64,000 nt of DNA, from IMG/VR virus record IMGVR_UViG_3300028920_000022, positions 1-64,000 of that record. One strand, written 5' to 3'. The notes under the pieces are model-generated. The model was not told where the DNA came from. It did no database searches and saw only the letters and a program-made list of their open reading frames with translations. Positions 2,126 through 22,712 of this stretch are shown in pieces. The first letter of the stretch is position 1. Each line of letters opens with the position of its first letter. Made by a program: the position numbers and the translations under genes.

Positions 2126-2329
2126 TTACTCAATAATTTCGCGAATTATAATTTCTTCGCAAGTTTCTTTTCCGGTTATATTTTTTGGAGTAATTTCTAT
2201 CTCAATACCAACGAGGAGTGGCATTCGTTTTTGTCCTGGAGTCCACGTTCGTTTAAGATTTTTAATAATATCATCCGTCGGCATCAGTTCGCTACTGTAA
2301 CAACGTTTAAGATTTCTAAGTTTAGTCAT
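2126..2329 (-). CDS. IIE-tail protein
   Basis: ends TCEEIIIREIIE. Confidence 0.7.
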   Translation of the reverse strand: MTKLRNLKRCYSSELMPTDDIIKNLKRTWTPGQKRMPLLVGIEIEITPKNITGKETCEEIIIREIIE

Positions 2330-2573
2330 TCCACCTTTTTATCACCAGCTGATATTCGTCTAAACCCTCACAACATACTGCAATAAGTTTTCCTTCGTTT
2401 TTTTCGCAAATTATGTGTTTATGTCCTTTGCACATGTGTTCGCATTGATCTTGACGTATACGGTAATGTCTTTCTGACCTACCAATATCAGAACACGCAG
2501 CGAATAAAAGCAATATTACAACTGATATTGTAACAAATAATATCATCCATGTGCTAACATCTCCTTTTTCCAT
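2322..2573 (-). CDS. Cys-rich membrane-anchored/lipoprotein-like protein
   Basis: N-terminal hydrophobic helix, LFAAC, several Cys. Confidence 0.6.
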   Translation of the reverse strand: MEKGDVSTWMILFVTISVVILLLFAACSDIGRSERHYRIRQDQCEHMCKGHKHIICEKNEGKLIAVCCEGLDEYQLVIKRWND

Positions 2574-2580
2574 GACATCC

Positions 2581-3501
2581 TCACAGTGACAGCATAGCTG
2601 CGGCTTCTTCTACATTAATTCTGTTAGCAGCCAAATCTGACAATACATGTCTTAATGTACGAACTTGCCATCCGTCGTAAACAATCCCATCGTAATACAA
2701 AACCTGTTTCGAAAACTGAACCGGATTGATAGGCTGTTTTCTAAACGGGGTCTGTAACCCACACATTTGTCGGAAATTAACCGGCACGTCATCAATTACC
2801 GTGTCATGATTGCATCCGTCAATAAAAGGATCTTGCGTTAACCCATGTTTGTTTTCGTAAATGTCGCACAAATCTACAAATTTTTCCCCGTCAAATTTAA
2901 GTTCCGCAAACCTAACATTTGTGGCGCCCAAGTTTTTAGCAAAATTAATATATTTGGCTATTTCTTTTTCTGAGTCTATTGCGTTTTTGATTAGATTACA
3001 ATTCAACCTAATTCTTCCACCAATATTACGAATTTTCTGGATAGATTCTTTTAGTTCGATTTCTTTTAGATTAACCCCTACAATATTACGATTTTTATTC
3101 AAATCATAATGGTGGATAGATATATTTACACCAGCTATTTGATCAAGAAAATCAACCGTTCTTTTCAATAAAGATCCGTTAGTAGTAATCCAAACAGAGC
3201 GGTTTGCCTCATTTAACATTCGAATTAGGGGTTCTAAATCTTTATATAAGGTAGGTTCTCCGCCTAAAAGGATTATGTTTTGTTTTCCGGTATTAATTGC
3301 TGCTTGTCCAATTTCCCGCCAGGTAGCTTTATGATCTGGGTGCCATCCACGTTTTTCTACACACCAGCTACATTTACCATTGCATTCGGGTAATAGGTTA
3401 ACTTCCAACCAATCTTGGAAATTACCTCCGCAAAAATTGGATGGATGAGGATATGTTTTAGTAGACGCATCCACGTGGTTGTTCTTGCACATTGATGACA
3501 C
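2581..3501 (-). CDS. radical SAM protein
   Basis: CNGKCSWC (CxxxCxxC), GGEP, TTNG; start uncertain. Confidence 0.9.
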   Translation of the reverse strand: MSSMCKNNHVDASTKTYPHPSNFCGGNFQDWLEVNLLPECNGKCSWCVEKRGWHPDHKATWREIGQAAINTGKQNIILLGGEPTLYKDLEPLIRMLNEANRSVWITTNGSLLKRTVDFLDQIAGVNISIHHYDLNKNRNIVGVNLKEIELKESIQKIRNIGGRIRLNCNLIKNAIDSEKEIAKYINFAKNLGATNVRFAELKFDGEKFVDLCDIYENKHGLTQDPFIDGCNHDTVIDDVPVNFRQMCGLQTPFRKQPINPVQFSKQVLYYDGIVYDGWQVRTLRHVLSDLAANRINVEEAAAMLSL

Positions 3502-3607
3502 AATTAACTTCTGGAGTCGCTAGCTTTTTGATTAAAGCTTCTGCTTTTTCAACAGAAATTTTGCCAGACTGTACGTCCTTCAGTATGTCTTTGATTTGTT
3601 TTTCCAT
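3458..3607 (-). CDS. 49-aa peptide with SHOCT-like helix pair
   Basis: hand translation MEKQIKDILKDVQSGKISVEKAEALIKKLA...GCVY. Confidence 0.55.
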   Translation of the reverse strand: MEKQIKDILKDVQSGKISVEKAEALIKKLATPEVNCVINVQEQPRGCVY

Positions 3608-3609
3608 AG

Positions 3610-3683
3610 TGACTCCAGTGGGACTTGAACCCAACATTTCTAGAGTGAGAGTCTAGTTGCCTATCCTGTTAGCAGATGGAGCC
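3610..3683 (-). tRNA. tRNA-Glu(CTC)
   Basis: GGCTCCA/TGGAGTC acceptor, CTAGA-CTCTCAC-TCTAG anticodon arm, GGTTCAAGTCC T arm; no CCA. Confidence 0.9.
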
Positions 3684-4003
3684 TATTCTATTATCTCTTT
3701 AATATCCCAATCGTTATCTGTATATTGACAAGGTAGAATTCTTTTGATTACTTTTCCCCACTCACCAACTTTGTAAAACGAATATGAAACTCTAAATCTA
3801 TTCAAACCACATTTAATACAATTATTATCATCTCCCCATGTATGTTTGAATTTTTCTGCGTGGCTTCTAGATTCGAATTTACATTCTGGTTCTTCAATTT
3901 TTTCGCTAGACCATTTTGTACATTTTAAACAGATATATTTGCGTCCCGGAATTTGAGAAGTTGTTCTGCACCAATCATGAAAATACATACTACTATTATT
4001 CAA
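3683..4003 (-). CDS. ZnF-IIE family protein (two zinc knuckles)
   Basis: HDW..CLKC, HTW..CIKC, ends WDIKEIIE. Confidence 0.8.
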   Translation of the reverse strand: MNNSSMYFHDWCRTTSQIPGRKYICLKCTKWSSEKIEEPECKFESRSHAEKFKHTWGDDNNCIKCGLNRFRVSYSFYKVGEWGKVIKRILPCQYTDNDWDIKEIIE

Positions 4004-4259
4004 TAATATTCTTGATTATTACTTCTCGACAAGTATCTTCAGAATCATATGGCAAAATATCCTCGGTCCATTCTCCCATTTCGTCATTCCAGCGCTGGTA
4101 CCCAGATGTACCACATTCCGTGCAGTAATACCACCTAATTGTACCTTCCGCCGTATGGTTGTCCGAATCTTCCACAAAATGGTGTGTTTTTGATGCGGCT
4201 AATCTCTTTCGTATTGTTTCCACCAAAAAAATAAAGTCTTTGTTTTCCTTCAGTTTCAT
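3996..4259 (-). CDS. ZnF-IIE family protein
   Basis: HHF..CTECG..TCREVIIKNIIE. Confidence 0.8.
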   Translation of the reverse strand: MKLKENKDFIFLVETIRKRLAASKTHHFVEDSDNHTAEGTIRWYYCTECGTSGYQRWNDEMGEWTEDILPYDSEDTCREVIIKNIIE

Positions 4260-4615
4260 ATAATATCTCGAATGATTAATTCAGAACAAGTATATTTTTC
4301 AGCGAAACCATCTGCTGGCGAAAACTTCCCAGGTTTAGAAACCCTAAGTTTTTCATTATAATCTTTATAAAACATATTTTCGCACTCAGGACATATAATA
4401 ATTAAATCGCTTGATAATATTAAATATGAGAAGTAATCTCTTTTTATTTGGACACGATGCCCTAGCTTTTCTAGTAATTTAATCTCATCCCACAGTTTGT
4501 ATTTTCCATAACCAAATCTTATTATTCTGTATAACGTACAAGAGGAATGAAAGATTAGCTTCCATAAAGGCTTCAAACATAGGGAAAAAAACAATATGAT
4601 TAAAAGTTCAATCAT
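4256..4615 (-). CDS. ZnF-IIE family protein with N-terminal hydrophobic segment
   Basis: LGH..CPEC..TCSELIIRDII; ATGA-coupled start. Confidence 0.75.
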   Translation of the reverse strand: MIELLIILFFSLCLKPLWKLIFHSSCTLYRIIRFGYGKYKLWDEIKLLEKLGHRVQIKRDYFSYLILSSDLIIICPECENMFYKDYNEKLRVSKPGKFSPADGFAEKYTCSELIIRDII

Positions 4616-4878
4616 TCTATTATATCTTTCGTTGCAAACTCTCCACAAGTCATATCTGGATAATCAAACCACATATTGTTTTCCAAATAGTAAATGTTCA
4701 AATAAGTACGAAAATTATTGTACCAAGCAATATCTTTATCCCAGCCGCCGGTTACAGTAAAAATGGTACCACAGTTTTCGCATATCATATCATAATGGTT
4801 TGCCAGTATATGTCTTTTGACCAGTTTGTGTCCTAAATTCTCTAACTTTTCTATGGCGTGGTGAGGATATTTGATCAT
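4612..4878 (-). CDS. ZnF-IIE family protein (CGTIFTxxGGW subfamily)
   Basis: LGH..CENCGTIFTVTGGW..TCGEFATKDIIE. Confidence 0.8.
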   Translation of the reverse strand: MIKYPHHAIEKLENLGHKLVKRHILANHYDMICENCGTIFTVTGGWDKDIAWYNNFRTYLNIYYLENNMWFDYPDMTCGEFATKDIIE

Positions 4879-5171
4879 TTGATTACATCCATAATAATAC
4901 ATTCGTCACAAGTAATATCAGTGTAATATTCCCACATCAAATCACCACCAACCCAATAATGTAAACGTATGAGCAGATCAGATTTTGCGTACCACTCTTG
5001 ATCTCTATACCATCCGCCATTGATAGTAAAGATTGTACCACATTTAGAACAAGTGATTTCCAACACTTTATCTTCTGGTGGCATACAAGCCCTCCAAGGA
5101 AATTCTATTTCAGCCAAAGAATGCCCCAAACGTATTAATTGGTTTTTGAATTTGTTGCGACAATCTTTCAT
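4875..5171 (-). CDS. ZnF-IIE family protein (CGTIFTxxGGW subfamily)
   Basis: LGH..CSKCGTIFTINGGW..TCDECIIMDVIK. Confidence 0.8.
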   Translation of the reverse strand: MKDCRNKFKNQLIRLGHSLAEIEFPWRACMPPEDKVLEITCSKCGTIFTINGGWYRDQEWYAKSDLLIRLHYWVGGDLMWEYYTDITCDECIIMDVIK

Positions 5172-5479
5172 TCAATTATTTCCTTGATAATACATTCTTT
5201 ACAGGTCAAGTTAGGATACTTTCGCCAGTTGGTGAAGCGTCCTACCTTGTTGGTGCTCCAGTAGTATAAAAGCACAGGCTCTCCGATTTTGATATACCAC
5301 GAATTGTCTCTTTCCCATCCGCCAGTAATGGTGAAAATAGTTTTGCAATTATTACATACAAAAACAGCATGGTCTTTATAGATGTCAATACCAACATCCA
5401 TACGTGATTTTTTGATTAGATCGTGCCCCAGATTCTTTAGAATCATTTTGAAATCTTCTGGATATTTTGGCGTGGTCAT
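5168..5479 (-). CDS. ZnF-IIE family protein (CGTIFTxxGGW subfamily)
   Basis: LGH..CNNC..TCKECIIKEIIE. Confidence 0.8.
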   Translation of the reverse strand: MTTPKYPEDFKMILKNLGHDLIKKSRMDVGIDIYKDHAVFVCNNCKTIFTITGGWERDNSWYIKIGEPVLLYYWSTNKVGRFTNWRKYPNLTCKECIIKEIIE

Positions 5480-5499
5480 GTGATTATTTAGAAATTATT

Positions 5500-5772
5500 T
5501 CATTCAATTACGCCCTTAATTATACACTCATCACATGTTTCGTTTTCATAATGAAGCCAATCATCCTTTTTGATATTCCAATAATACATAAAATTACTTT
5601 CGTTGCTGTTGCTGTAAAATGCACCAGGAGTTACAAAAACAGTGGAACACTTTTCGCACACAAAAACAGTGTAATGTAAACCTTTTTTATTGCACAAAAC
5701 TTCGTCAACCAGTTTTTCAACTACTTTGTGTTCAAGGTTTTCTAATATTACTACGAGTTGTGCTTTAGTCAT
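5500..5772 (-). CDS. ZnF-IIE family protein
   Basis: LEH..CEKC..TCDECIIKGVIE. Confidence 0.8.
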   Translation of the reverse strand: MTKAQLVVILENLEHKVVEKLVDEVLCNKKGLHYTVFVCEKCSTVFVTPGAFYSNSNESNFMYYWNIKKDDWLHYENETCDECIIKGVIE

Positions 5773-6050
5773 TGTATAATGTTTCTGATTATAAAGTCTT
5801 TACATGTGTCTTTAGGATAATATTTCCAACCAACCATATTTCCTCCCCAATACAATATATCCTTTACGAACATGTTGTTACCACCCCACTGACCTCCGCT
5901 CGTAGTAAAAATCGTTCCACAATTATTACAAACGAAAAGCGAGTTATCAGGGAACACGTTATCTTTAAACACATCATCCCATGGTTTTTCAACCGGATGA
6001 TGACCAAGGCTTTGTAATGCCTTCACAAATTTTTGTTTTTTGGTGGTCAT
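5769..6050 (-). CDS. ZnF-IIE family protein
   Basis: LGH..CNNCG..TCKDFIIRNIIQ. Confidence 0.8.
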   Translation of the reverse strand: MTTKKQKFVKALQSLGHHPVEKPWDDVFKDNVFPDNSLFVCNNCGTIFTTSGGQWGGNNMFVKDILYWGGNMVGWKYYPKDTCKDFIIRNIIQ

Positions 6051-6319
6051 TTGATGATATTTCTAACAATCGTTTCGTTGCAAGTATATTCATTATCTTT
6101 TTGCCAACCGTTCCATTTTCCGCCCCAATATATAATAGTTATTTCAGATATATCACCTTCAAATGTACCACCCAATATAGTAAAAATTGTGCCGCAACTG
6201 CGGCAAACAAAAACATTAAATCTCATACCTTTAATATCAAGCGCTTTGCTCGCTGGTGTTTCAATAACCTGATGACCACGCAACTTTAATTTTTCTACAA
6301 ATTTTTGCTTTTTAGTCAT
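6047..6319 (-). CDS. ZnF-IIE family protein
   Basis: RGH..CRSCG..TCNETIVRNIIK. Confidence 0.8.
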   Translation of the reverse strand: MTKKQKFVEKLKLRGHQVIETPASKALDIKGMRFNVFVCRSCGTIFTILGGTFEGDISEITIIYWGGKWNGWQKDNEYTCNETIVRNIIK

Positions 6320-6600
6320 TGAATAATGCTTCTAATAATAGTTTCATCGCATGTTAAGTTATTATAATCCTCCCACTTATCTGTAACATAATTAAATATT
6401 TGCCATTCTGCTCTTGGAAGATTACAAAACCAACCACCGTTTACAGTAAAAATAGTTCCACACTTGGTACATATTTTTTCTTTAATTTTCCCTTTCTCAT
6501 CGTAAGATAGGGGTTGCCTCCATGGAAACACAATCCATTTTAGCGTGTGACCTTTGCCACATAAATATTCCAAACATTCGTTGGAGCTTGAGAAATTCAT
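6316..6600 (-). CDS. ZnF-IIE family protein
   Basis: KGH..CTKCG..TCDETIIRSIIQ. Confidence 0.8.
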   Translation of the reverse strand: MNFSSSNECLEYLCGKGHTLKWIVFPWRQPLSYDEKGKIKEKICTKCGTIFTVNGGWFCNLPRAEWQIFNYVTDKWEDYNNLTCDETIIRSIIQ

Positions 6601-6881
6601 TGGATTATATTTCGGATAATCATTTCTTTACAGGTTATCATGGGATATTCTTCCCAAAATCCGGTCCAATAATATATACAGTACGGATATAATCCATAAA
6701 ATTCATCATCTCTATCCCAGCCACCGTTGAGAGTAAAAACAGTGCCACAATTAATGCACTCAAAATTTCGATTGGGCGAATATAACAATGTAACGCTAGG
6801 AAATGACGTTGATGTTCTTACCAAATGATGACCAAGCTTACCCAACTTTTCTTTATATTTTTGTGGGACAGTTGCCAGCAT
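6597..6881 (-). CDS. ZnF-IIE family protein
   Basis: LGH..CINCG..TCKEMIIRNIIQ. Confidence 0.8.
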   Translation of the reverse strand: MLATVPQKYKEKLGKLGHHLVRTSTSFPSVTLLYSPNRNFECINCGTVFTLNGGWDRDDEFYGLYPYCIYYWTGFWEEYPMITCKEMIIRNIIQ

Positions 6882-7138
6882 TACTCTATTACTTCCCGAA
6901 TTATAAACTCATCACATGTTTCGTTTTTATATTCTAACCATTCTGTGTAACTGTGTCGATAATATATTTTGATACCAAAACCGATTGTAGAAAATGCTGC
7001 ACCACAACCATCACATATTGTTATTTTAGAACGCCTTGGGCTAGAATGCAATATTTCCTTCGCGGATTTTTCTATTAAACTATGACCACGTGTTTCTAAT
7101 TGTTTTCGGTATCTTTGAGGTAGTGGTCTTATATTCAT
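6881..7138 (-). CDS. ZnF-IIE family protein
   Basis: RGH..CDGCG..TCDEFIIREVIE. Confidence 0.8.
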   Translation of the reverse strand: MNIRPLPQRYRKQLETRGHSLIEKSAKEILHSSPRRSKITICDGCGAAFSTIGFGIKIYYRHSYTEWLEYKNETCDEFIIREVIE

Positions 7139-7177
7139 GCCGCATCCTACCGCACCAAGCGAAAAATGTCTAGAACA

Positions 7178-7615
7178 TTATTCTATAATATTTTGTATAA
7201 TTGCTTCTTTTTCAATTAGAAATATTTTTCTCAAATCTTCTACACTATCAGCAAATCTGGGCCACTCGTCAGTACCGCCTATCTCATATATATATTTTCT
7301 ATCGAAAATACTAATAATTGAAAACACATTAATTGACGTACCTTTGAACTTTTGTTCAGAATCGATAAGCCCAGTATCTGCGAAATATTGGTATTTCGAA
7401 CCAATATATTTCCATGTTTCTAACATTGCTTTGTTTTCCTCGCAATTAAATGTTTCGTATTTTCCACTCCTAAATACTGCTTTGTATATATTTGATACGT
7501 CAACCTCTGGCGAAAGCAACAAATTAACAACTTTAACCAATACACCCTGACAGTACATCCCATCAGTGTCTTCTGGGTCTTTCAAACTATTATGTACTAT
7601 GACGTAATACTTCAT
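7178..7615 (-). CDS. IIE-tail protein without zinc finger
   Basis: ends EAIIQNIIE. Confidence 0.7.
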   Translation of the reverse strand: MKYYVIVHNSLKDPEDTDGMYCQGVLVKVVNLLLSPEVDVSNIYKAVFRSGKYETFNCEENKAMLETWKYIGSKYQYFADTGLIDSEQKFKGTSINVFSIISIFDRKYIYEIGGTDEWPRFADSVEDLRKIFLIEKEAIIQNIIE

Positions 7616-7628
7616 AGTTTACCTTGAG

Positions 7629-7701
7629 CAGGGCAGTCCGGATTCGAACCGAAATCGGCGGAGTTGGAAACCACAATGCTTGCCATTTGCACCACTGCCC
7701 T
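7629..7701 (-). tRNA. tRNA-Trp(CCA)
   Basis: AGGGCAG/CTGCCCT acceptor, anticodon loop TTCCAAC, GGTTCGAATCC. Confidence 0.85.
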
Positions 7702-7753
7702 GGGTCGGTTATGCAACCTCAGTTATCAAATTAACCTTTCGGTCAAGCTTCAG

Positions 7754-7836
7754 TGCTTTGGGAGAGACTCGAACTCTCACGCCCGGAGGGCATCAAATTT
7801 TGAATTTGACATGTCTTCCTGTTCCATCACCAAAGC
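7754..7836 (-). tRNA. tRNA-Leu(CAA)
   Basis: GCTTTGG/CCAAAGC acceptor, TCAAA-TTCAAAA-TTTGA, long variable arm. Confidence 0.9.
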
Positions 7837-7841
7837 GGTTG

Positions 7842-7870
7842 TGAGTCAGGTCGGGATCGAACCCAACCGT
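7842..7870 (-). pseudogene. tRNA 3'-half remnant (T arm plus acceptor 3' strand)
   Basis: GGTTGGGTTCGATCCCGACCTGACTCA; no matching 5' strand found. Confidence 0.4.
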
Positions 7871-7934
7871 TTTACTTTGCCGCTAGCCTTAACAACGTTT
7901 AGAATTTGTTGTCTCAGTTTTTCCTCTTGTTCTG

Positions 7935-8165
7935 TCATTTCTTGTCCAAAATCTTTTCTAAGTCCTCTGCGACTTGTTCTATTCTTATTTCTCTATCAAG
8001 CTCTATTTTGATCGGATCGATAACCACCAGTTCACCCTCTATATTTTTCCTAACTTCTTCCTCTTTCTTTTTTAAAACTTTTCTTACGGATTCATCAAAA
8101 CCCCTAAGTTCGTACCTAGAAATTTCTTTAGCCCAAGTCAAACCCTCGTATTTTGCCTTTTCCAT
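7935..8165 (-). CDS. hypothetical coiled-coil protein
   Basis: start corrected to MEKAKY, just 3' of tRNA-Pro. Confidence 0.65.
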   Translation of the reverse strand: MEKAKYEGLTWAKEISRYELRGFDESVRKVLKKKEEEVRKNIEGELVVIDPIKIELDREIRIEQVAEDLEKILDKK

Positions 8166-8167
8166 AG

Positions 8168-8240
8168 TCCGGGATGCATGATTCGAACATGCGTCTCGTG
8201 GTCCCAAACCACGTGCTAAACCAAACTCAGCTAAACCCGG
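8168..8240 (-). tRNA. tRNA-Pro(TGG)
   Basis: CGTGG-TTTGGGA-CCACG anticodon arm, GTTCGAATC T loop. Confidence 0.9.
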
Positions 8241-8474
8241 TTATTCAATTATCTCTTTAATTAAGAAATCTTCGTCTGACATCTTACAGGGTAAAAACTC
8301 CTGGATCCTTTCTTTTGTTTCTTGAATTGAACAATGTACATCGTATTTCCCAGTTTTGACAAACAGTTGCAGATGTAAATGTTGTAATGGCTGCCTACAC
8401 TTTTTACAAATTATAGTCGGTGGCTCATCGTATGCCGGCGGTAACTCCTCCCAAATGTGTCTGTATCCGCTCAT
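8241..8474 (-). CDS. ZnF-IIE family protein
   Basis: HIW..CKKC..PCKMSDEDFLIKEIIE. Confidence 0.8.
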   Translation of the reverse strand: MSGYRHIWEELPPAYDEPPTIICKKCRQPLQHLHLQLFVKTGKYDVHCSIQETKERIQEFLPCKMSDEDFLIKEIIE

Positions 8475-8755
8475 TCATCCATCCATTGTTCAATATATAC
8501 AGGTCCCATTTCCCATATTTTCTTAAAACATTCGTTGAGCAAGTTCGCATCGTCTTCTTCGCAAAAATGATACATTAAAGTGTCGTTAGTGCTCCAATTC
8601 ATACACCCATCCCACTTTAAATGTCCTTTTACCCTGGTTATAGAAACGTCCTTACCATTTTCTCTCCTGTTTTCTTTTATGCTAAAATCCATACTATACT
8701 CTCCAGGAATGATTTCTAGAAAATGATATTTGCGTATGTTAACAACTTCACTCAT
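8471..8755 (-). CDS. hypothetical protein
   Basis: coupled ORF, KWDGC..HFC motif. Confidence 0.7.
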   Translation of the reverse strand: MSEVVNIRKYHFLEIIPGEYSMDFSIKENRRENGKDVSITRVKGHLKWDGCMNWSTNDTLMYHFCEEDDANLLNECFKKIWEMGPVYIEQWMDE

Positions 8756-8928
8756 TCTATTATGTCCTTGATTATCATTTCCCTCACTATTTTTTCAACA
8801 TCAACACCATTTTTGATAGCTTCTTCGCATATGAATTTAAACTCTTCTTCGTAAAATGAAGACGCTCCGTCCGGCGACAATGTTTTGGCTTTTGGTCTCT
8901 TTTTAATCCGCGAACATGGTTTATTCAT
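8752..8928 (-). CDS. 58-aa IIE-tail protein
   Basis: hand translation MNKPCSR...IVREMIIKDIIE; ATGA overlaps on both sides. Confidence 0.7.
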   Translation of the reverse strand: MNKPCSRIKKRPKAKTLSPDGASSFYEEEFKFICEEAIKNGVDVEKIVREMIIKDIIE

Positions 8929-9215
8929 CGAACCAACCCTCTTTCCCTCAAAGTTTGATAAGCAAATTCCATCGCCTCCCCCTCGGATCCTATAAAAATA
9001 TAGTTTAACTCATCATCGTCTGTTTCGTATACACCATACAAATCGTCTTCAATCATCCGGTAATCCACCCATCTACCATCTTCTCCAGAAACAATAGACT
9101 TTAGCATTGGCTTAATATAAGCAGGACGTACACTAAAAGTACCCTTAGTATATTGGGCTTGAATTCCGCTAAAATAGTTTAATTCATTTGCAATTTGTTC
9201 AAATGGGTGGGTCAT
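8925..9215 (-). CDS. hypothetical protein
   Basis: AAGGAGG SD upstream of ATG. Confidence 0.7.
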   Translation of the reverse strand: MTHPFEQIANELNYFSGIQAQYTKGTFSVRPAYIKPMLKSIVSGEDGRWVDYRMIEDDLYGVYETDDDELNYIFIGSEGEAMEFAYQTLRERGLVR

Positions 9216-9250
9216 GATTCCTCCTTATGTCATTTAATGGTTCCTTTCGT

Positions 9251-9324
9251 TGGGGTGATCGACGGGTAACGCTCCCGCTACAACAGTGCCACAAACTGTC
9301 CGCTCACTTTTTGCGTTCGATCAC
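9251..9324 (-). tRNA. tRNA-His(GTG), C73 plus encoded CCA, no encoded G-1
   Basis: GTGATCG/CGATCAC acceptor, ACAGT-TTGTGGC-ACTGT; atypical T loop AGCGTTA. Confidence 0.85.
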
Positions 9325-9326
9325 AG

Positions 9327-9399
9327 CTCCCCGAGTTGAGATTCGAACTCACGACCACGCGGTTAACAGCCGCGCGCTCTACCACTGAGCTATCGGGGA
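9327..9399 (-). tRNA. tRNA-Asn(GTT)
   Basis: TCCCCGA/TCGGGGA acceptor, loop CTGTTAA, canonical D and T arms. Confidence 0.95.
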
Positions 9400-9406
9400 A
9401 TATTCT

Positions 9407-9751
9407 TCATTCTATCACTTCTTTTATTATTACCTCCTTACAACTGCATTTTACTAGTGTATTTAAATTGTCAAAATCTTTTTTACTAAAATATCCATAC
9501 GCAGTGAAAACAGATTTCTTAAAACCAAATGTACTGTTTATGTAATCCCAAGTTGTTTCTATTTTTAGATTCAGATCATTGCTTTCCAAAACTTCTTCAA
9601 CAAAATTAATTTTTGATCTTAATCCGCGCATATCGTACAATTTAGCTAAATTCGTCAAATAAAACCCTACACCTCGGCAGCATAAACATCTGTAATATAC
9701 TGCAGGACCTGAAACGTGGTCTAAAATTAGTTTATGATTCTTATCTATCAT
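9407..9751 (-). CDS. ZnF-IIE family protein
   Basis: NHKL..CLCC..SCKEVIIKEVIE. Confidence 0.75.
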   Translation of the reverse strand: MIDKNHKLILDHVSGPAVYYRCLCCRGVGFYLTNLAKLYDMRGLRSKINFVEEVLESNDLNLKIETTWDYINSTFGFKKSVFTAYGYFSKKDFDNLNTLVKCSCKEVIIKEVIE

Positions 9752-9762
9752 AGTGTTTCCAG

Positions 9763-9835
9763 TGGTACGGGTCGGAGTCGAACCAACGACGCTCGCCTCT
9801 TCGGGGCGACGCTCTACCTGCTGAGCTACCGTACC
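9763..9835 (-). tRNA. tRNA-Phe(GAA)
   Basis: GGTACGG/CCGTACC acceptor, TCGCC-CCGAAGA-GGCGA (C33, G37). Confidence 0.85.
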
Positions 9836-9880
9836 ATGATTGTTTTATACGCATGTTTTTGTGTTATCTCCTAACTTTAG

Positions 9881-9955
9881 CGCCCATACCGAAATTCGAA
9901 TTCGGGATCTCTTGATTGACAATCAAGCGTCTTAACCTAGCTGGACCATATGGGC
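9881..9955 (-). tRNA. tRNA-Asp(GTC)
   Basis: GCCCATA/TATGGGC acceptor, CTTGA-TTGTCAA-TCAAG. Confidence 0.9.
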
Positions 9956-9956
9956 A

Positions 9957-10034
9957 TGGCTGGGATGGCAAGGATTGAACTTGCAACCTCCAAATTCAGA
10001 GTCTGGCGCTCTGTTCCAATTGAGCTACATCCCA
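9957..10034 (-). tRNA. tRNA-Gln(CTG), encoded CCA
   Basis: TGGGATG/CATCCCA acceptor, CCAGA-CTCTGAA-TTTGG. Confidence 0.9.
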
Positions 10035-10051
10035 TTATTAACCTACTTAAA

Positions 10052-10087
10052 ACCAAAAAACCCGGCTAGCCATTTTTGCTGCCGGGT
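10052..10087 (-). terminator. intrinsic terminator (candidate attenuator) upstream of tRNA cluster
   Basis: minus strand CCCGGCAGC-AAAAATG-GCTAGCCGGG followed by TTTTTT. Confidence 0.8.
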
Positions 10088-10114
10088 CGTGCCATCGAAT
10101 TAAATTAAAAGATC

Positions 10115-10246
10115 TTAGAACCACATATCTTTTGGCACGATCTGGCTGGGCTGATTATTAAATTGCCGTGGATCGCCAGGCGCATTACAATCCAACCACT
10201 TATCCAAATGATTAAAAGAATGTAATTTTTGTGCCAAAATACTCAT
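10115..10246 (-). CDS. 43-aa candidate leader peptide
   Basis: MSILAQKLHSFNHLDKWLDCNAPGDPRQFNNQPSQIVPKDMWF, ending just before the terminator. Confidence 0.6.
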   Translation of the reverse strand: MSILAQKLHSFNHLDKWLDCNAPGDPRQFNNQPSQIVPKDMWF

Positions 10247-10368
10247 GATTGTGTCTCTATATGTTTAAATGCCTATCTGTGCTCGACTTTTTTGAAACGT
10301 TATTTAAAAGCTCCCTGTGTCCAGTATGGAAGATCATGGACACGCTATTTGCGTATCCACTGAACACA

Positions 10369-10510
10369 GGGAAAATCTAAACGATCCCCCGGTATCCGGC
10401 TCATCTGGCGGAAAAATCAGATACCAGGGGGACCAAACTAGGAAAAATTTAAGCGATCCCCCGGTATCCAATCTTGGGGGGGAAAGAAGAATACCGGGGA
10501 ACCAAACCAA
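10369..10510. repeat. two ~70-bp tandem hairpin-forming units
   Basis: GGAAAA..CGATCCCCCGGTATCC...ATACC(A)GGGG..ACCAAAC occurs twice. Confidence 0.75.
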
Positions 10511-10712
10511 CGCCAACCAACTTGAGTAGCAACAAACACCCTACAACACCACTAAACGAAGGTCAAGAAGAATCGGGAGCCGCCCAAAAATGCGGGTCCC
10601 AGACCAGCTGGGACCCTACCCTCACCGCAATGTGCAGGATGCCTATATTTATAAAGGAGCAGGACGAATTTGTCAAGCCATTTTCTCCCAGGCAATATCT
10701 AAACATATTAAC

Positions 10713-11120
10713 ATGGATCCTAGAAATTTAAACAAAATCGTACGAATGGCAGAAGATTTCGAAAAAATGGCTCAGCTCAATTCCCAGAGCGGATTAGTTA
10801 TGGATGTGCTGAAAGCTGCGAAACTAGCGTACCAACAGGGAAGAGATGTTCTACCAAGTTGGCTGCGTCCAGATCTAGAAAAGGTAAGAAGTGCTGTTCG
10901 TGTGTTTTATGGCGCGGTTCATGCCGGCAATACCAAACCACAAGAGTTGTCTAAATTCCTGGGCAATGTTGCACAACAATCAAACGCTCTTGCTTCTCGA
11001 ATTCAACAAAACGAAGACAACCCATATGCAGATCAAACGGCAATGACGGCATCTCAGATTGTGGTTCCATACCTTAACGCACTTAGTCAGTTCGCCCACA
11101 CAATGCGCCGGATGATGTGA
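10713..11120 (+). CDS. hypothetical protein, possibly virion-associated
   Basis: start corrected to MDPRNLNKIVRMAEDFEKMAQ. Confidence 0.65.
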   Translation: MDPRNLNKIVRMAEDFEKMAQLNSQSGLVMDVLKAAKLAYQQGRDVLPSWLRPDLEKVRSAVRVFYGAVHAGNTKPQELSKFLGNVAQQSNALASRIQQNEDNPYADQTAMTASQIVVPYLNALSQFAHTMRRMM

Positions 11121-11183
11121 AGATTCCAACTGATACAATCACGCCTTCAAAACCACAGCCTCGCGATGTAGCCCGGGTTCTGC

Positions 11184-11531
11184 CTACAAAGTAACATTAT
11201 AGATACAGAGCTTGCCCCAGGTTAAACTGTCCACAGGATAGGTAATACCTGGCGGACCAAACTTGTTGGCTTCAATTGTAACCGTGGCATGGGCAACAAA
11301 TATCACCACATCTGCCAAGTCACGATTATCCTCTTCCTCAAAAGAACGAATAACCATAATGCGCTGGTTTAGCTGTTTCACCTTGTCTGGATAATCTGGA
11401 TCTGCAGCAATAATAGCGTCAAATTCGCTGCCTGACATATAATCATTGATATACAGCTGTTTAACCAATGCATTTCTTACACTGGCAGTAAGATCGTTAT
11501 TAACAAAGATTATAGCGGCGGGAAGACCCAT
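11184..11531 (-). CDS. hypothetical protein
   Basis: ORF with protein-like composition. Confidence 0.7.
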   Translation of the reverse strand: MGLPAAIIFVNNDLTASVRNALVKQLYINDYMSGSEFDAIIAADPDYPDKVKQLNQRIMVIRSFEEEDNRDLADVVIFVAHATVTIEANKFGPPGITYPVDSLTWGKLCIYNVTL

Positions 11532-11533
11532 TT

Positions 11534-11995
11534 TTAGAGCGTAACCTCGAAACCTTCGTTTAACTGATCGTCAGCGTCACTGACATCTTCGGGCTTTTCT
11601 TCCTCTTTTTGTTCTTTTTGCCACTTTGAGAAGGATTCGGTAGAACCGTCTTCATGGGCTTTCATCCATTTTCCATCACACGAATAAGCAATATCCTGGT
11701 TATCTTTTACCTTAACTTCGTTGGCTCCGACCATATCCATTTTCTTCATAATTTCGTAACAAGCCAAGATAGCTTCTCGTGAGGATTCTACACCTTCTCG
11801 GTATTCGTCTGCTAGCTGAGTAAGATTAGACAGGTTACTTTCGGCGTCCTGCAATTTTGCTTTAAGATCCGAATAGGTTTTTTTAATCTTTCCCAAGTGT
11901 TTTTCTACACTTTTACGGGAGTGTTTACCATTCAGTTTTTCTGGTCTTTTAGCCGCCAATGAGATAAGAATACGTTTTCTTTGGATAGATTTCAT
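11534..11995 (-). CDS. coiled-coil hypothetical protein
   Basis: heptad-rich centre, acidic C-terminus. Confidence 0.7.
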   Translation of the reverse strand: MKSIQRKRILISLAAKRPEKLNGKHSRKSVEKHLGKIKKTYSDLKAKLQDAESNLSNLTQLADEYREGVESSREAILACYEIMKKMDMVGANEVKVKDNQDIAYSCDGKWMKAHEDGSTESFSKWQKEQKEEEKPEDVSDADDQLNEGFEVTL

Positions 11996-12085
11996 AAAAA
12001 GCCTAAAAATAACAATCTTATCTGTATGCGGCGATATTACCCTGGAATTTTGTCGATGACAGCGCTGAGAATGACCGAGCTATAT

Positions 12086-12505
12086 ATGGCAAAAATAGAC
12101 CCAAAGAAAATGGAAGCCTTTATCAAAAAGAGTTTGAATCAAGTTTTGGCGCCATTTTGTGGAGAAAAACTAACAGAAACAACCGAAGATATTATTAGAC
12201 ACCAGCTGATAAACAAACTACAAACCCTAAAAACGGCTAGAACAATAGATGATTTTGATATTCGTGGAATTAGTTTTTCAGATGATGGGCGTGTAGATGT
12301 TTCTTGTGATATCCAACCCAGCATTCTTGGCTGCGAACTTCTATCCCCAGAAAATTATGTTACACATGACTGGGTGGATGATTGTGTTATCAAGCGATGT
12401 CATACCTGTGGTTTGGTTATTCAAATAAATGATGGAGAATATTTGGTATCTATTGGAGACAATTTGAGCTGCCAAGAATATGCTATCAGAGAAATAATCG
12501 AGTGA
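12086..12505 (+). CDS. ZnF-IIE module fused to a tail-sheath-C-like domain
   Basis: start MAKIDPKK; HDW..CHTCG..SCQEYAIREIIE; sheath resemblance judged by eye only. Confidence 0.65.
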   Translation: MAKIDPKKMEAFIKKSLNQVLAPFCGEKLTETTEDIIRHQLINKLQTLKTARTIDDFDIRGISFSDDGRVDVSCDIQPSILGCELLSPENYVTHDWVDDCVIKRCHTCGLVIQINDGEYLVSIGDNLSCQEYAIREIIE

Positions 12506-13086
12506 AAATATCATCCAGAAAAATTAGAAAAGTTCCTTACGAAGCACGCAAAGAATTAATTAAATGCATGGAAGGAAACGAGTTTGATGTAGAAGCCAGC
12601 GCTTTGCTTAATGATTTTCCGGATACCGATCATTCTGACTTAATATTGGTGGCGGCAGAAAAGAAAGAAAAGAATTTTCTATTGAGGCTTCTTGAAAACC
12701 CAAAAACCGATATAATAAGTGTGGTTACGGTACTTGTGGGATATCAGTTGGTGGGTAGAAGCAGTATTAGTATTTTATATGATTTGAAAAAGCATCATTT
12801 GCGCAATCCGGCTCTACCGGAAGCTTTTAGGATAATGGAAGATTATATAGTTGAGTGTTATGAGCGCGCGGCTCATCAACCATATCCTTCGCCATATAAC
12901 TACTACGCCCTGACCTTCTTTTTCGAACAAAATATTCCTCATCGAGATGAGAAAAAACTTATCCGAGCATTATTTTCAACTCCTGCTGGTGTAGAGTGGG
13001 TGCGCAGATTCGCGATAAAACTTCCCGTTCAGGATCCGCTGCGAAAATTTATAGATAATATGATGGCTATTTACGACATTATCTAG
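12502..13086 (+). CDS. helical hypothetical protein with IIE-like tail
   Basis: GTGA-coupled, ends MAIYDII. Confidence 0.65.
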   Translation: MKISSRKIRKVPYEARKELIKCMEGNEFDVEASALLNDFPDTDHSDLILVAAEKKEKNFLLRLLENPKTDIISVVTVLVGYQLVGRSSISILYDLKKHHLRNPALPEAFRIMEDYIVECYERAAHQPYPSPYNYYALTFFFEQNIPHRDEKKLIRALFSTPAGVEWVRRFAIKLPVQDPLRKFIDNMMAIYDII

Positions 13087-20328: not shown

Positions 20329-21360
20329 CTAATATCTCGTCAGCGTATATTCACATTCAGGTTTGCTTCCTGCAAGAATAGCGTTTCCGCAGGTAATTCT
20401 TCCCAGGTCTTCCTCCAGAGAAGGAACAAATACCAACACATCAAAACCAGCTTTTTTCAAAGAATCTTCTGCTTGCTGGTAAGGATAAAATTGCTGATAA
20501 GCGTTTTCATCCCAGAATTTGTTCTGTACGCATGCATCGGTTTTGTGCATTGGAGTAATTTTACACATAAATTTATCCGGATCAAACAGTTTTGCCAGTT
20601 TAGTCCCACTAATTGCCGCATCAGTGAGAGCAAAGTTTAGAGCAATTTTACGTCCAACAACATCGGTAATGTTAGACATAATTTTGGAAATATCTTCCAA
20701 ACCCAAAGCAGACCCACCAAAATCTTCGAATCTTCTCTGCTCATCAGTAGTATTGATGGACAACTGTAGCCCAGCATTTCCTTCCATTAAATGGTTTTTA
20801 ATATCCATCCACTGGCAAATAAAAGCTTCGAGTCTTCTATTGTTTCGGGGCATCATGGTGGAAACAACGGGATGAAAACCCCAACCTCGTTTTTCTCTAA
20901 TTTCGTGTACCATATGTGGTGTAACTGATAATACATCATTATTGAAGGTGGGCTCACCCATTCTCGCAAAATGCAGGTTTAAACGATCTGTATGTTTTAC
21001 CTCGGGATGAATGGAAATAGCCGCGCGCATTTGGTTTAATAGATCGCCGTAGGTTGCATTATATCCTGGACCTACTTTGGGAACGTCGCAGAATTTACAT
21101 TTCATAGAGCACCCATATTGAGAAGAAATAGTAATCACCCATTTCTTTTCTAGTGGCATTAGCTTGCCATGAGGCACTCCGTTTATTTGATCTTTTAACC
21201 CCATAAAATCGGCTTTGACATTCTTTTCTTTACCATAATCGCCAAGAGAAAGACACTCCAGTTTTCTACCAGGATCAAAAAGAGATCTTTCGCCTTCAAC
21301 GATCAAGATGGTGCCGGTTGGAACAGCGATTTTTTCTTTGATTATAGAAAACATATTCAA
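20329..21360 (-). CDS. RlmN/Cfr-like radical SAM enzyme (putative RNA methyltransferase)
   Basis: ISSQYGCSMKCKFC, RMGEP, LQLSIN, C-terminal ITCG. Confidence 0.8.
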   Translation of the reverse strand: MNMFSIIKEKIAVPTGTILIVEGERSLFDPGRKLECLSLGDYGKEKNVKADFMGLKDQINGVPHGKLMPLEKKWVITISSQYGCSMKCKFCDVPKVGPGYNATYGDLLNQMRAAISIHPEVKHTDRLNLHFARMGEPTFNNDVLSVTPHMVHEIREKRGWGFHPVVSTMMPRNNRRLEAFICQWMDIKNHLMEGNAGLQLSINTTDEQRRFEDFGGSALGLEDISKIMSNITDVVGRKIALNFALTDAAISGTKLAKLFDPDKFMCKITPMHKTDACVQNKFWDENAYQQFYPYQQAEDSLKKAGFDVLVFVPSLEEDLGRITCGNAILAGSKPECEYTLTRY

Positions 21361-21476
21361 CCCTTATGTAGAGTGGGTAGGGTGTTCTCACAGCCCTCGC
21401 GATTGCCACCCCTCCGTGAAGGTTCCCGAGCGGCGAGGATTACTACACGAATACGAAGGTTTCCCACAGTGAGTCT

Positions 21477-22004
21477 TCAGTTAGGATCGTCCTCAATGAA
21501 AACGATTTTGGCGGCAACAATGTCTTTTCTAAGCTGGTCTCTCACAAACAGACAAATATAACTTCCATCGCCGTAGCCTGATGAACTAACCACACCACCA
21601 TCCATAATGCCGGCTCTACCACTATTTAGCGTTTTGTCGCACGCTTTTCCGTAGAACGTATTAAGATCCCCATATTCACCCTCGCCATTACCATACTTTG
21701 GATCGTCCCAAAACCCAGCTTGTCCCGAATCTACACCAACATCTATTCCTGAGTTTTCCCAACATTCGTTCAAAGCGTTAGGTAAACCATCTATGTCGGC
21801 ATGACGTATCTCAAGTTCAACAACTCTCTCATCATTAACGCGAATATAAGCTGTCCACTTGCCATTACGAACATCTTTCAAAGAACCAGCACACCAAGTA
21901 CCTCGGCTGTAACAAGGATCTGAAACAATAAGCGTTCCCGAAGTAATCTCGAACGTTCCTAGTTTATTGTCTACCATATCTTTCAAATGGGCTGTGTATA
22001 CCAT
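21477..22004 (-). CDS. DUF4241-like protein
   Basis: VSDPCY, GVDSGQAG, SGYGDGSY motifs. Confidence 0.75.
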   Translation of the reverse strand: MVYTAHLKDMVDNKLGTFEITSGTLIVSDPCYSRGTWCAGSLKDVRNGKWTAYIRVNDERVVELEIRHADIDGLPNALNECWENSGIDVGVDSGQAGFWDDPKYGNGEGEYGDLNTFYGKACDKTLNSGRAGIMDGGVVSSSGYGDGSYICLFVRDQLRKDIVAAKIVFIEDDPN

Positions 22005-22017
22005 ATGTTTTGTCTTT

Positions 22018-22239
22018 CTAGTTTATATCGTAAACACAAGGTTCCGGAATTTTAACTGGCTCTTTCTTTTCGTTTACACACTTTGCGTTACATGCTTGGC
22101 AAGTATACGTATGCATCAAGCCTTCATGCAACAATGTGCCCTGAAGTTTTACTAGGGGGTCTTTATCTATTACAGGACCGTTTGGTGTTTCAACCGTGTA
22201 AAGATACTCGGATCCAGTATATTTCCAAACGTGTGTCAT
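22018..22239 (-). CDS. small zinc-binding protein
   Basis: THVW..CQAC..PC. Confidence 0.6.
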   Translation of the reverse strand: MTHVWKYTGSEYLYTVETPNGPVIDKDPLVKLQGTLLHEGLMHTYTCQACNAKCVNEKKEPVKIPEPCVYDIN

Positions 22240-22673: not shown

Positions 22674-22683
22674 TTTCAACAGT

Positions 22684-22712
22684 ATTTTATATGACACGCT
22701 GCGTCATGTCAA
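22684..22712 (-). promoter_or_regulatory. sigma70-like promoter
   Basis: TTGACA-17 nt-TAAAAT. Confidence 0.65.

What the first reader, a model, noticed from the sequence alone, without database searches (positions are those of the whole stretch)
10052..10246. Leader-peptide attenuator that may switch on the phage tRNA cluster when tRNAs are depleted
Seen: a 43-codon ORF (10246-10115) is followed by an intrinsic terminator (10087-10052) just upstream of the first tRNA. The leader segment GCCAGATCGTGCCA can pair with TGGCACGACCCGGC (8 perfect bp plus extension), which includes the terminator's 5' arm, so the two structures are mutually exclusive. About 22 of 43 codons (TTG x3, CAT x2, TTT/TTC x3, AAT x4, GAT x4, TGG x2, CAG x2, CCA x2) are read by tRNAs encoded downstream. 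Established: this is the layout of his/trp/pheST-type ribosome attenuation. Inference: stalling caused by host tRNA cleavage (anticodon-nuclease defence) or starvation would allow read-through into replacement tRNAs, making a multi-tRNA sensor.
Basis: partly seen in the sequence, partly recalled or inferred. Interest (0 to 1): 0.85.

Follow-up and report, generated by a model that had tools for sequence, protein, structure and literature searches.

The report
Possible tRNA-sensing leader before phage tRNAs
Just ahead of a giant phage's tRNA genes lie a short reading frame, three competing RNA helices and a strong stop signal for transcription, arranged like a classical bacterial attenuator; the frame is unusually rich in the codons read by those same tRNAs, but only this one sequence supports the idea.

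Summary
A 43-codon ORF (10246-10115, minus strand) is followed by the strongest minus-strand intrinsic terminator in the 64-kb window (stem 10086-10061 plus U6). The terminator ends about 20 nt before tRNA-Gln, the first gene of a tRNA and small-gene operon.

Two details are wrong or overstated:
- No tRNA-His is detectable, so the cognate count is 20 of 43, not 22.
- The 8 perfect base pairs of the "antiterminator" lie 5' of the terminator stem. Only a 4-bp interrupted extension competes with it.

New support:
- The enrichment in cognate codons is specific to this frame and to this tRNA set (p about 0.001 by five null models).
- A third helix (codons 3-6 with the antiterminator arm) completes a 1:2 / 2:3 / 3:4 layout with near-equal energies of about -20 kcal/mol (joint p about 0.01 or less).
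- There is no room for a sigma70 promoter between the terminator and the tRNA.

Against:
- No homologue or diverged relative covers the region.
- Codon usage is atypical for this phage and the ribosome-binding signal is weak.
- The CAG codons sit where a stall would favour termination.
- Four more hairpin-plus-U elements lie upstream, which suggests factor-dependent antitermination instead.

Verdict: a plausible, untested ribosome-mediated attenuator of a phage tRNA operon (about 0.42). The anticodon-nuclease trigger is speculation.

The parts
10115..10246 (-). Candidate leader ORF, 43 codons plus TAA. 20 codons are cognate to the tRNAs encoded downstream (TTG x3, TTT/TTC x3, AAT x4, GAT x4, TGG x2, CCA x2, CAG x2).
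   Evidence: Enrichment tests. No homologue. Codon-usage score 0.03 per codon.
10231..10259 (-). Region 1 (anti-antiterminator arm). UUUUGGCAC (10239-10231, codons 3-6), CACAAUC (10253-10247) and UAGA (10259-10256) flank the AUG, which sits in a 7-nt internal loop.
   Evidence: Minimum-energy folds. Duplex 1:2 = -19.8 kcal/mol.
10116..10146 (-). Region 2 (shared arm, codons 34-44). It pairs either with region 1 (GUGCCAAAA 10138-10130, GAU-A-UGUG, UCUA) or with region 3 (GCCAGAUCGUGCCA 10146-10133).
   Evidence: (repeat I4).
10081..10094 (-). Region 3. UGGCACGA (10094-10087) lies 5' of the terminator stem. Of the stem's own 5' arm CCCGGC (10086-10081), four nucleotides also pair in the antiterminator extension.
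10049..10086 (-). Intrinsic terminator T: stem 10086-10078 / 10070-10061 with bulged A10067, 7-nt loop, then U6 GG U4.
   Evidence: Strongest minus-strand terminator in the window.
9957..10034 (-). tRNA-Gln (CUG), the first gene after the terminator.
9880..9955 (-). tRNA-Asp (GUC).
9762..9835 (-). tRNA-Phe (GAA).
9326..9399 (-). tRNA-Asn (GUU).
8167..8240 (-). tRNA-Pro (UGG).
7753..7836 (-). tRNA-Leu (CAA).
7628..7701 (-). tRNA-Trp (CCA).
10538..10566 (-). Promoter-like P2: TTGACC, 17-nt spacer, TAGGGT. Both hexamers are conserved in relative L001 while the spacer has diverged. It is the likely source of the leader transcript.
10303..10504 (-). Three long hairpins A (10504-10454), B (10434-10383) and C (10381-10303), each followed by a U-containing tract. 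A and B are a 72-nt tandem repeat. A is kept in L001 with a compensatory change. G.U pairs favour the minus-strand RNA.
   Evidence: Fold z = -8.07.
10586..10676 (-). Promoter-like P1 (TTGACA 10676-10671, 17-nt spacer, TATAAA 10653-10648), then a 22-nt stretch identical in L001, then hairpin T1 (10616-10594) and U5. Together these make a unit of about 55 nt that looks like a small RNA or a first terminator.
   Evidence: A strain variant at 10609 gives G.U on the minus strand.

Best explanation
The segment 10259-10049 (minus strand) is a translation-sensitive transcription attenuator at the head of the phage's tRNA and small-gene operon.

Proposed mechanism:
1. Transcripts come from sigma70-type promoters upstream (P2, perhaps also P1).
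2. On RNA without a ribosome, region 1 (around the AUG, codons 3-6) pairs with region 2 (codons 34-44). Region 3 is then free to form the terminator with region 4, and transcription stops about 20 nt before tRNA-Gln.
3. A ribosome held anywhere in roughly codons 1-29 covers region 1, either itself or through a ribosome queued behind it. Region 2 then pairs with region 3, taking part of the terminator's 5' arm, and RNA polymerase reads on into the tRNAs.
4. A ribosome that has reached codons 30-44 covers region 2, so the terminator forms.

About half the codons are read by seven of the tRNAs encoded downstream. The speed of leader translation would therefore report the supply of those tRNAs and feed back on their synthesis.

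Shown: the ORF, the terminator, the three helices with their energies, and the statistics.
Inferred: that the ORF is translated, that stalling occurs, that the weakly overlapping antiterminator really blocks termination, and what causes any tRNA shortage.
For: - T is the strongest minus-strand intrinsic terminator in 64 kb, and it sits in a 5' leader rather than at an operon end.
- No sigma70-like promoter fits between T and the tRNA. The one -10-like hexamer there is destroyed in a strain variant at 10045.
- The three alternative helices have energies of -19.8, -20.6 and -20.4 kcal/mol.
- Each of 1:2 and 2:3 is at about the 2% tail of shuffles. Both together are reached in 0 of 2000 shuffles, and in 0.85% of natural windows.
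- The nascent ribosome-free RNA folds 1:2 and leaves region 3 free.
- With a ribosome mask, the full antiterminator forms for A-site codons 1-12. With a queued second ribosome it forms for codons 1-29, apart from one codon where only the 8-bp core forms. It does not form for codons 30-42.
- Cognate codons number 20/43 against 24.6% in phage genes: binomial p = 0.0014.
- Only 1 of 1109 windows of 43 codons in real genes reaches 20. Monte Carlo gives p = 0.001. All seven proximal tRNAs are represented at least twice, p = 5e-5, though that last test was chosen after seeing the counts.
- In-frame count against dinucleotide shuffles of the leader itself: p = 0.00025-0.001. The other two frames score 7 and 10.
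- The actual tRNA set matches the leader better than 99.8-99.95% of random anticodon sets.
- In a strain about 3-6% diverged nearby, the 96 nt covering T and the ORF's 3' part show no change.
- The phage also carries polynucleotide kinase/phosphatase and Thg1-like genes, plus nearby nucleotidyltransferase and methyltransferase genes. This is indirect context for the importance of tRNA supply.
Against: - The antiterminator overlaps the terminator stem by only 4 interrupted pairs worth -6.4 kcal/mol. Its 8 perfect pairs can coexist with the terminator, and that combined state is 9.6 kcal/mol more stable. The top 3 bp of the terminator are free to start strand displacement.
- Cognate codons are dispersed rather than in tandem runs. 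Nine of the 20 lie in codons 29-43, where a stall at or near region 2 would favour termination.
- Both CAG codons (32 and 35) are there, so a shortage of the first tRNA of the operon would not induce it.
- With a single ribosome at most codons from 13 to 26, the thermodynamic model lets 1:2 re-form.
- The codon-usage score is at the 2.8th percentile of real genes and the 82nd percentile of spurious ORFs.
- The ribosome-binding signal is weak at -2.9 kcal/mol, although that is typical of this phage.
- There is no homologue and no gene call for the ORF.
- No relative covers the region, so there is no covariation test.
- No RNA run was listed, so there is no transcript evidence.
- Four further hairpin-plus-U elements upstream (T1, A, B, C) are not explained by this model.
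- The finding was picked by eye, so p values near 0.001 need some discount.
Confidence: 0.42

Rival explanations
1. T is one of a series of five terminator-like hairpins (T1, A, B, C, T) between the sigma70-type promoters P1/P2 and the operon. Expression of the tRNAs would depend on factor-dependent, processive antitermination (as with lambda N or Q, or HK022 put), or on a phage RNA polymerase that ignores these signals. That would give timed, delayed-early expression. On this reading the 43-codon ORF and its codon content are fortuitous.
For: - All five hairpins are oriented for the minus strand and each is followed by U-containing tracts.
- T1 and hairpin A are conserved in relative L001 with compensatory changes, and A has a better U tract there.
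- The region 10535-10290 folds with z = -8.07.
- P1 and P2 belong to the same promoter class as the array of early-looking leaderless genes at 49-64 kb.
- The ORF has poor coding statistics and no homologue.
Against: - It gives no explanation for the frame-specific and tRNA-set-specific codon enrichment at p about 0.001.
- It gives no explanation for the 1:2 / 2:3 / 3:4 layout.
- No nut-, put- or qut-like element or antiterminator protein was identified, and Rfam finds nothing.
- The U tracts of A, B and C are displaced from the stems or short.
Confidence: 0.28
2. The ORF domain plus T is a small free-standing gene, either a 43-residue peptide or a structured RNA of about 200 nt, with its own terminator. 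The tRNAs are made by constitutive leakage through T.
For: - The domain 10260-10112 closes on itself with a 20-bp long-range helix and folds better than shuffles, z = -2.36.
- T is a canonical end-of-gene signal.
- Phage T4's tRNA cluster also encodes small stable RNAs of unknown function (my own knowledge, not checked here).
Against: - A strong terminator about 20 nt before the first gene of a 10-kb operon with no promoter of its own would starve that operon.
- The peptide has no relatives and gets a low recognition score from the protein language model.
- No Rfam family matches.
- The codon and tRNA match is again left unexplained.
Confidence: 0.15
3. The leader senses uncharged tRNA directly, like a T-box. 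The UGGC motifs in regions 1 and 3 would pair with the GCCA 3' ends of tRNAs.
For: UGGCAC occurs in both region 1 and region 3, and tRNA-Gln ends in GCCA.
Against: - There is no match to the T-box or any other Rfam family, even at E = 1.
- No Stem I or specifier loop was identified.
- The resemblance of 10153-10143 to the 3' end of tRNA-Gln is at chance level, P = 0.21.
Confidence: 0.03

Closest known systems
Multivalent leader-peptide attenuators of enteric bacteria (ilvGMEDA, thr), and the trp, his, leu and pheA leaders
   Same: A short ORF in the 5' leader and an intrinsic terminator before the first gene. Three overlapping helices are present: 1:2 as anti-antiterminator, 2:3 as antiterminator and 3:4 as terminator. 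The leader is enriched in codons tied to the operon's product, and as in ilv and thr several codon kinds are sensed at once.
   Different: - The regulated genes are tRNAs, together with small protein genes, not amino-acid biosynthesis genes.
- The ORF is longer: 43 codons against 14-32.
- The regulatory codons are dispersed, with no tandem run.
- The stop codon lies after region 2 rather than before it.
- The overlap between antiterminator and terminator is only 4 interrupted pairs.
- The element is in a phage.
pheST attenuator of E. coli (leader pheM)
   Same: A leader-peptide attenuator that controls part of the translation apparatus in response to the supply of charged tRNA.
   Different: pheST encodes the synthetase and senses a single amino acid through a run of Phe codons. 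Here the tRNA genes themselves would be controlled, and seven species would be sensed.
T-box riboswitches
   Same: tRNA-responsive control of a terminator/antiterminator pair in a 5' leader.
   Different: A T-box binds uncharged tRNA directly and needs no translation. No T-box match was found here.
Processive antitermination in phages (lambda N/nut and Q, HK022 put)
   Same: Several terminators in series between early promoters and a delayed operon in a phage.
   Different: No nut or put element and no antiterminator protein was recognised, and those systems do not involve a leader ORF with matching codons.
Phage tRNA clusters as counter-defence (T5-like phages against tRNA-cleaving systems: PMC10264068, PMC11555353, PMC11464382)
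   Same: A phage-encoded tRNA set, alongside RNA-repair-type genes, that could replace depleted host tRNAs.
   Different: The titles and abstracts retrieved for those papers concern the tRNAs themselves. A full-text search found no leader-peptide sensor described for phage tRNA genes.

Membership tests
Ribosome-mediated (leader-peptide) transcription attenuator | Short ORF in the 5' leader, on the same strand and upstream of the regulated genes | tested here: met
   ATG ORF of 43 codons at 10246-10115. An ORF this long arises by chance in 7.5% of shuffles.
Ribosome-mediated (leader-peptide) transcription attenuator | Intrinsic terminator between the leader ORF and the first regulated gene, with no promoter in between | tested here: met
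   Stem of -14.9 to -16 kcal/mol plus U6 at 10086-10055, with the tRNA starting at 10034. No sigma70-like site lies in between.
Ribosome-mediated (leader-peptide) transcription attenuator | Antiterminator helix that excludes the terminator by using its 5' arm | tested here: inconclusive
   The 2:3 duplex is -20.6 kcal/mol, but only 4 interrupted pairs (-6.4 kcal/mol) use stem nucleotides. The 8 perfect pairs coexist with the terminator.
Ribosome-mediated (leader-peptide) transcription attenuator | Anti-antiterminator (1:2) formed by the coding region, so that untranslated RNA terminates | tested here: met
   9 + 7 + 4 bp at -19.8 kcal/mol. This is the minimum-energy state of the nascent RNA. 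It lies at the 2% tail of shuffles.
Ribosome-mediated (leader-peptide) transcription attenuator | Regulatory codons enriched, matched to the operon's product, and placed where a stall frees region 2 | tested here: inconclusive
   The enrichment and its specificity are real at p about 0.001. Eleven cognate codons lie in codons 4-26, the sensing zone. Nine lie in codons 29-43, and both CAG codons are among them. There is no tandem run.
Ribosome-mediated (leader-peptide) transcription attenuator | The leader is translated | not testable with these tools
   The ribosome-binding signal is weak (-2.9 kcal/mol), as for many genes of this phage. No RNA run was listed. Codon usage is atypical.
Ribosome-mediated (leader-peptide) transcription attenuator | ORF and alternative helices conserved, with covariation, in relatives | not testable with these tools
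   The only diverged relative (L001) ends before the ORF. The other strains show no differences over the covered part, 10065-10246. No other relatives were found.
T-box riboswitch | Match to the T-box covariance model (Stem I, specifier, T-box bulge) | tested here: not met
   The Rfam scan of 3000-13000 at E <= 1 returned only tRNAs. The whole window at gathering score gave the same result.
Processive antitermination system (N/nut, Q/qut, put) | Several terminators in series downstream of early promoters | tested here: met
   T1, A, B, C and T all lie downstream of P1 and P2 and all are oriented for the minus strand.
Processive antitermination system (N/nut, Q/qut, put) | A recognisable antiterminator protein or RNA element | not tested
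   No Rfam hit. The proteins of the 458-kb contig outside the window could not be examined.

The most novel reading that the evidence does not exclude
The leader is a homeostatic multi-tRNA sensor. The rate at which a ribosome crosses 43 codons, about half of them read by tRNAs the operon encodes, sets read-through into those same tRNA genes. The phage would then make replacement tRNAs only when the cell's supply is short, whether from a codon-usage mismatch with the host or from tRNA cleavage by a defence nuclease. As far as the literature searches show, no leader-peptide attenuator controlling tRNA genes has been described, in phages or in cells.
Probability: 0.3. Interest if true: 0.85.

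Novelty: new variant of a known kind. Interest (0 to 1): 0.62.

Why it matters
Phage tRNA genes are now seen as both codon-supply aids and counter-measures against tRNA-cleaving defences, but how their expression is controlled is largely unknown. A leader whose translation reads out the supply of the same tRNAs the operon encodes would be a new use of classical attenuation. It would give direct feedback control of tRNA supply, and it could be tested in simple reporter constructs. It would also provide a sequence signature (leader ORF, terminator, and a codon-to-tRNA match) to search for ahead of tRNA clusters in other large phages. If it is false, the region is still worth mapping: it is an unusually terminator-laden, highly structured leader in front of a 10-kb operon of a 459-kb phage.

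Tried and rejected
Searches for relatives that cover the leader all failed:
- The neighbouring protein has only two relatives. Contig L001 stops about where the ORF would begin, and L002 does not reach it.
- IMG/VR, JGI metagenome and GTDB scans with proteins or DNA motifs returned only the source contig.
- The 43-residue peptide and the first protein of the operon have no homologues.
- The peptide is not on record as a called gene.
- Marsh and sediment runs hold strains with no differences over the covered part of the leader (10065-10246), which is uninformative.
- No RNA run was listed.

The small-protein family profile did find 361 representatives, and long arrays of these genes in other phages. 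Those loci have no tRNAs and a different upstream region.

Ideas rejected:
- A sigma70 promoter between T and the tRNA.
- A leaderless promoter directly in front of the ORF. The -35 position matches 1 of 6, read.
- The leader as a decayed tRNA copy.
- A T-box or any other Rfam family.
- Recurrence of the hairpin A/B motif elsewhere in the contig.
- A convincing target for the conserved 22-nt P1 RNA.
- Stop-codon reassignment as the reason for sparse long ORFs.

Full report
**Source and setting.** The window is the first 64 kb of a 458,729-bp viral contig from a marine-sediment metagenome (IMGVR_UViG_3300028920_000022 = Ga0272441_10000008). It has no close relative among GenBank phages. Eight tRNA genes lie on the minus strand: Gln-CUG 10034-9957, Asp 9955-9880, Phe 9835-9762, Asn 9399-9326, Pro-UGG 8240-8167, Leu-CAA 7836-7753, Trp 7701-7628 and Glu-CUC 3683-3609. 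They are interleaved with tightly packed small protein genes. The plus-strand gene listed as 10590-11120 really starts near 10713, as shown by alignment with two relatives. So 10712-10035 is a divergent intergenic region at the head of the tRNA operon.

**The observation.**
- The 43-codon ORF (10246-10115), the terminator, and the 14-nt inverted repeat 10146-10133 / 10094-10081 are all present.
- The terminator has stem 10086-10078 / 10070-10061 with one bulged A and a 7-nt loop, followed by U6-GG-U4.
- A scan I wrote for hairpin-plus-U sites finds this to be the strongest minus-strand intrinsic terminator in the whole window, at -14.9 kcal/mol.
- First correction: no tRNA-His is detected by ARAGORN or Rfam, so the cognate count is 20 of 43.
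- Second correction: the 8 perfect pairs of the proposed antiterminator use 10094-10087, just outside the terminator stem. Only a 4-pair extension interrupted by two A.C mismatches uses stem nucleotides. The 8-bp helix plus the terminator (-26.35 kcal/mol) is more stable than the extended antiterminator alone (-16.75). In equilibrium folds the terminator forms whatever is masked.

**New anatomy.**
- The minimum-energy fold pairs the start of the ORF with its end. UUUUGGCAC (10239-10231, codons 3-6) pairs with GUGCCAAAA (10138-10130). CACAAUC pairs with GAU-A-UGUG, and UAGA pairs with UCUA. The AUG sits in a 7-nt internal loop.
- This is a classical region 1:2. Duplex energies are 1:2 = -19.8, 2:3 = -20.6 and 3:4 = -20.4 kcal/mol.
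- A nascent transcript that ends before the terminator's 3' arm folds 1:2 and leaves region 3 free.
- With a 30-nt ribosome mask, the full antiterminator forms for A-site codons 1-12. With a second, queued ribosome it forms for codons 1-29, except one codon where only the 8-bp core forms. It does not form for codons 30-42.
- At the stop codon the model allows the antiterminator, but a ribosome would have to sit inside the 38-nt loop. I judge that sterically impossible; this is inference.
- The logic is therefore classical. No translation or fast translation gives termination. A stall in the first two-thirds of the ORF gives read-through.

**Statistics.**
- An ATG ORF of 43 codons or more within the 213 nt before the terminator arises in 7.5% of dinucleotide shuffles.
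- With the terminator held fixed, the 2:3 and 1:2 energies are each reached by about 2% of shuffled upstream sequences, and both together by 0 of 2000. With natural 163-nt windows of this genome as the upstream sequence, the joint frequency is 0.85%.
- Cognate codons make up 24.6% of this phage's long ORFs and 46.5% of the leader, binomial p = 0.0014.
- The leader ranks first among 216 ORFs of 35-60 codons.
- Only 1 of 1109 windows of 43 codons inside 61 genes reaches 20, and Monte Carlo gives p = 0.001.
- Dinucleotide shuffles of the leader itself give p = 0.00025, or 0.001 for stop-free shuffles. The other two frames hold 7 and 10 cognate codons.
- Random sets of 8 or 7 anticodons match the leader as well as the real set in 0.16% or 0.05% of draws.
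- The match between this frame and this tRNA set is therefore real at about 1 in 1000. It still deserves some discount, because the finding was chosen by eye.

**Points against.**
- The ORF's codon-usage score (0.03 per codon) lies at the 2.8th percentile of real-gene windows and the 82nd percentile of spurious ORFs.
- It has no homologue, no gene call and a low recognition score.
- Its ribosome-binding signal is weak, though so are those of many genes here.
- Nine of the 20 cognate codons, including both CAG codons, lie in codons 29-43. A stall in codons 30-42 masks region 2 and should favour termination.
- The overlap between antiterminator and terminator is small, and the free top of the terminator stem offers a place for strand invasion to begin (inference).
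- No relative covers the region, so nothing could be tested by covariation. The one mild sign of constraint is a strain about 3-6% diverged in flanking segments. It shows no change in the 96 nt covering the terminator and the ORF's 3' part, while the spacer between terminator and tRNA varies at 10045 and 10048.

**Upstream context.** Relative L001 has a neighbouring protein with 80% amino-acid identity. On the minus strand it conserves the following:
- TTGACA-17-TATAAA (P1).
- A 22-nt stretch identical in both sequences.
- A hairpin plus U run whose stem sequence is entirely different yet still paired (T1, 10616-10594).
- TTGACC-17-TAGGGT (P2), with a diverged spacer.
- A GC-rich hairpin (A) carrying a compensatory change.

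In the window, hairpin A is duplicated as B, 72 nt further on, and followed by a third long hairpin, C. The segment 10535-10290 folds with z = -8.07, and its G.U pairs favour the minus-strand RNA. All five hairpins (T1, A, B, C and T) are followed by U-containing tracts in the direction of the operon. This series is not explained by a leader-peptide attenuator. It is the main argument for the rival explanation, factor-dependent processive antitermination or timed expression. The two mechanisms could also coexist.

**Trigger.** Nothing in the sequence says what would cause a tRNA shortage. The phage carries a polynucleotide kinase/phosphatase (24537-25460) and a Thg1-like enzyme (22721-23464). 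A nucleotidyltransferase (25777-26442) and a methyltransferase (26913-27557) of unassigned function lie nearby. The first two suggest that damage to tRNA matters to this phage. Published work shows phage tRNAs countering tRNA-cleaving defences (PMC10264068, PMC11555353, PMC11464382). A simple codon-supply mismatch with the host explains a feedback sensor equally well.

**Comparison and novelty.** In working principle the nearest systems are the multivalent leader-peptide attenuators (ilvGMEDA, thr) and pheST. Membership in that class is met for the ORF, the terminator and the 1:2 helix. It is inconclusive for exclusion of the terminator by the antiterminator and for codon placement. It is untestable for translation, conservation and response. 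Full-text searches found no leader-peptide attenuator described for tRNA genes or for phage tRNA clusters. If real, this is a new variant of a known kind.

**Verdict.**
- Ribosome-mediated attenuator of the tRNA operon: 0.42.
- A series of terminators overcome by a factor or by a phage polymerase, with a fortuitous ORF: 0.28.
- A free-standing small gene with a leaky terminator: 0.15.
- A direct tRNA sensor of the T-box type: 0.03.
- The remainder is chance or something not considered.

Noticed in passing
window 2126-9751 and 19637-47859, minus strand; also L008-L011: A very large paralogous family of small proteins of about 65-115 residues. Members share an N-terminal 'H.L', a 'YY.C..CG' CxxC motif and a highly conserved C-terminal tail '[ST]C.[ED].II[KR].IIE'. 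The stop codon TGA overlaps the next ATG (GAATGA). There is no Pfam match. A profile finds 361 cluster representatives in 1.84 billion proteins. Another phage contig (L008) carries more than 50 such genes head to tail, with no tRNAs. Function unknown.
   Followed up: partly
window 49454-63839, plus strand: At least 15 near-consensus sigma70 promoters (TTGACA-17-TAnnnT), many followed 6-7 nt later by an ATG. These look like leaderless genes, one of which is the 382-residue ORF at 56802. The region also jumps from about 36% to about 50% G+C.
   Followed up: partly
window 10586-10676, minus strand: P1 followed by a 22-nt stretch identical in relative L001, then a terminator hairpin whose stem has been completely replaced yet still pairs. 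This is a conserved unit of about 55 nt that looks like a small RNA. No convincing target was found.
   Followed up: partly
window 10303-10504, minus strand: Three long hairpins A, B and C; A and B form a 72-nt tandem repeat. The fold has z = -8, and G.U pairs favour the minus-strand RNA. The A/B motif occurs nowhere else in the 459-kb contig.
   Followed up: partly
window 10713-11194, plus strand: The gene is 80-87% identical to two metagenomic relatives but loses frame near its 3' end. The relatives' C-terminus is encoded by the separate ORF 11117-11194. This could be a frameshift, a sequencing error or a decaying gene. The annotated start at 10590 is too far upstream.
   Followed up: partly
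window 20329-27557, minus strand (also 2581-3501): A cluster of genes of RNA-repair or RNA-modification type: Thg1-like 3'-5' nucleotidyltransferase (22721-23464), polynucleotide kinase/phosphatase (24537-25460), Pol-beta-type nucleotidyltransferase (25777-26442), SAM methyltransferase (26913-27557), and two radical-SAM proteins. No RNA ligase was looked for.
   Followed up: partly
window 9836-9956, as seen in run X4 (record 23): A 313-nt contig from a marine-sediment run (2015) matches 9956-10147 almost perfectly, but its other 120 nt do not align below 9956. That strain may carry something other than tRNA-Asp after tRNA-Gln.
   Followed up: no
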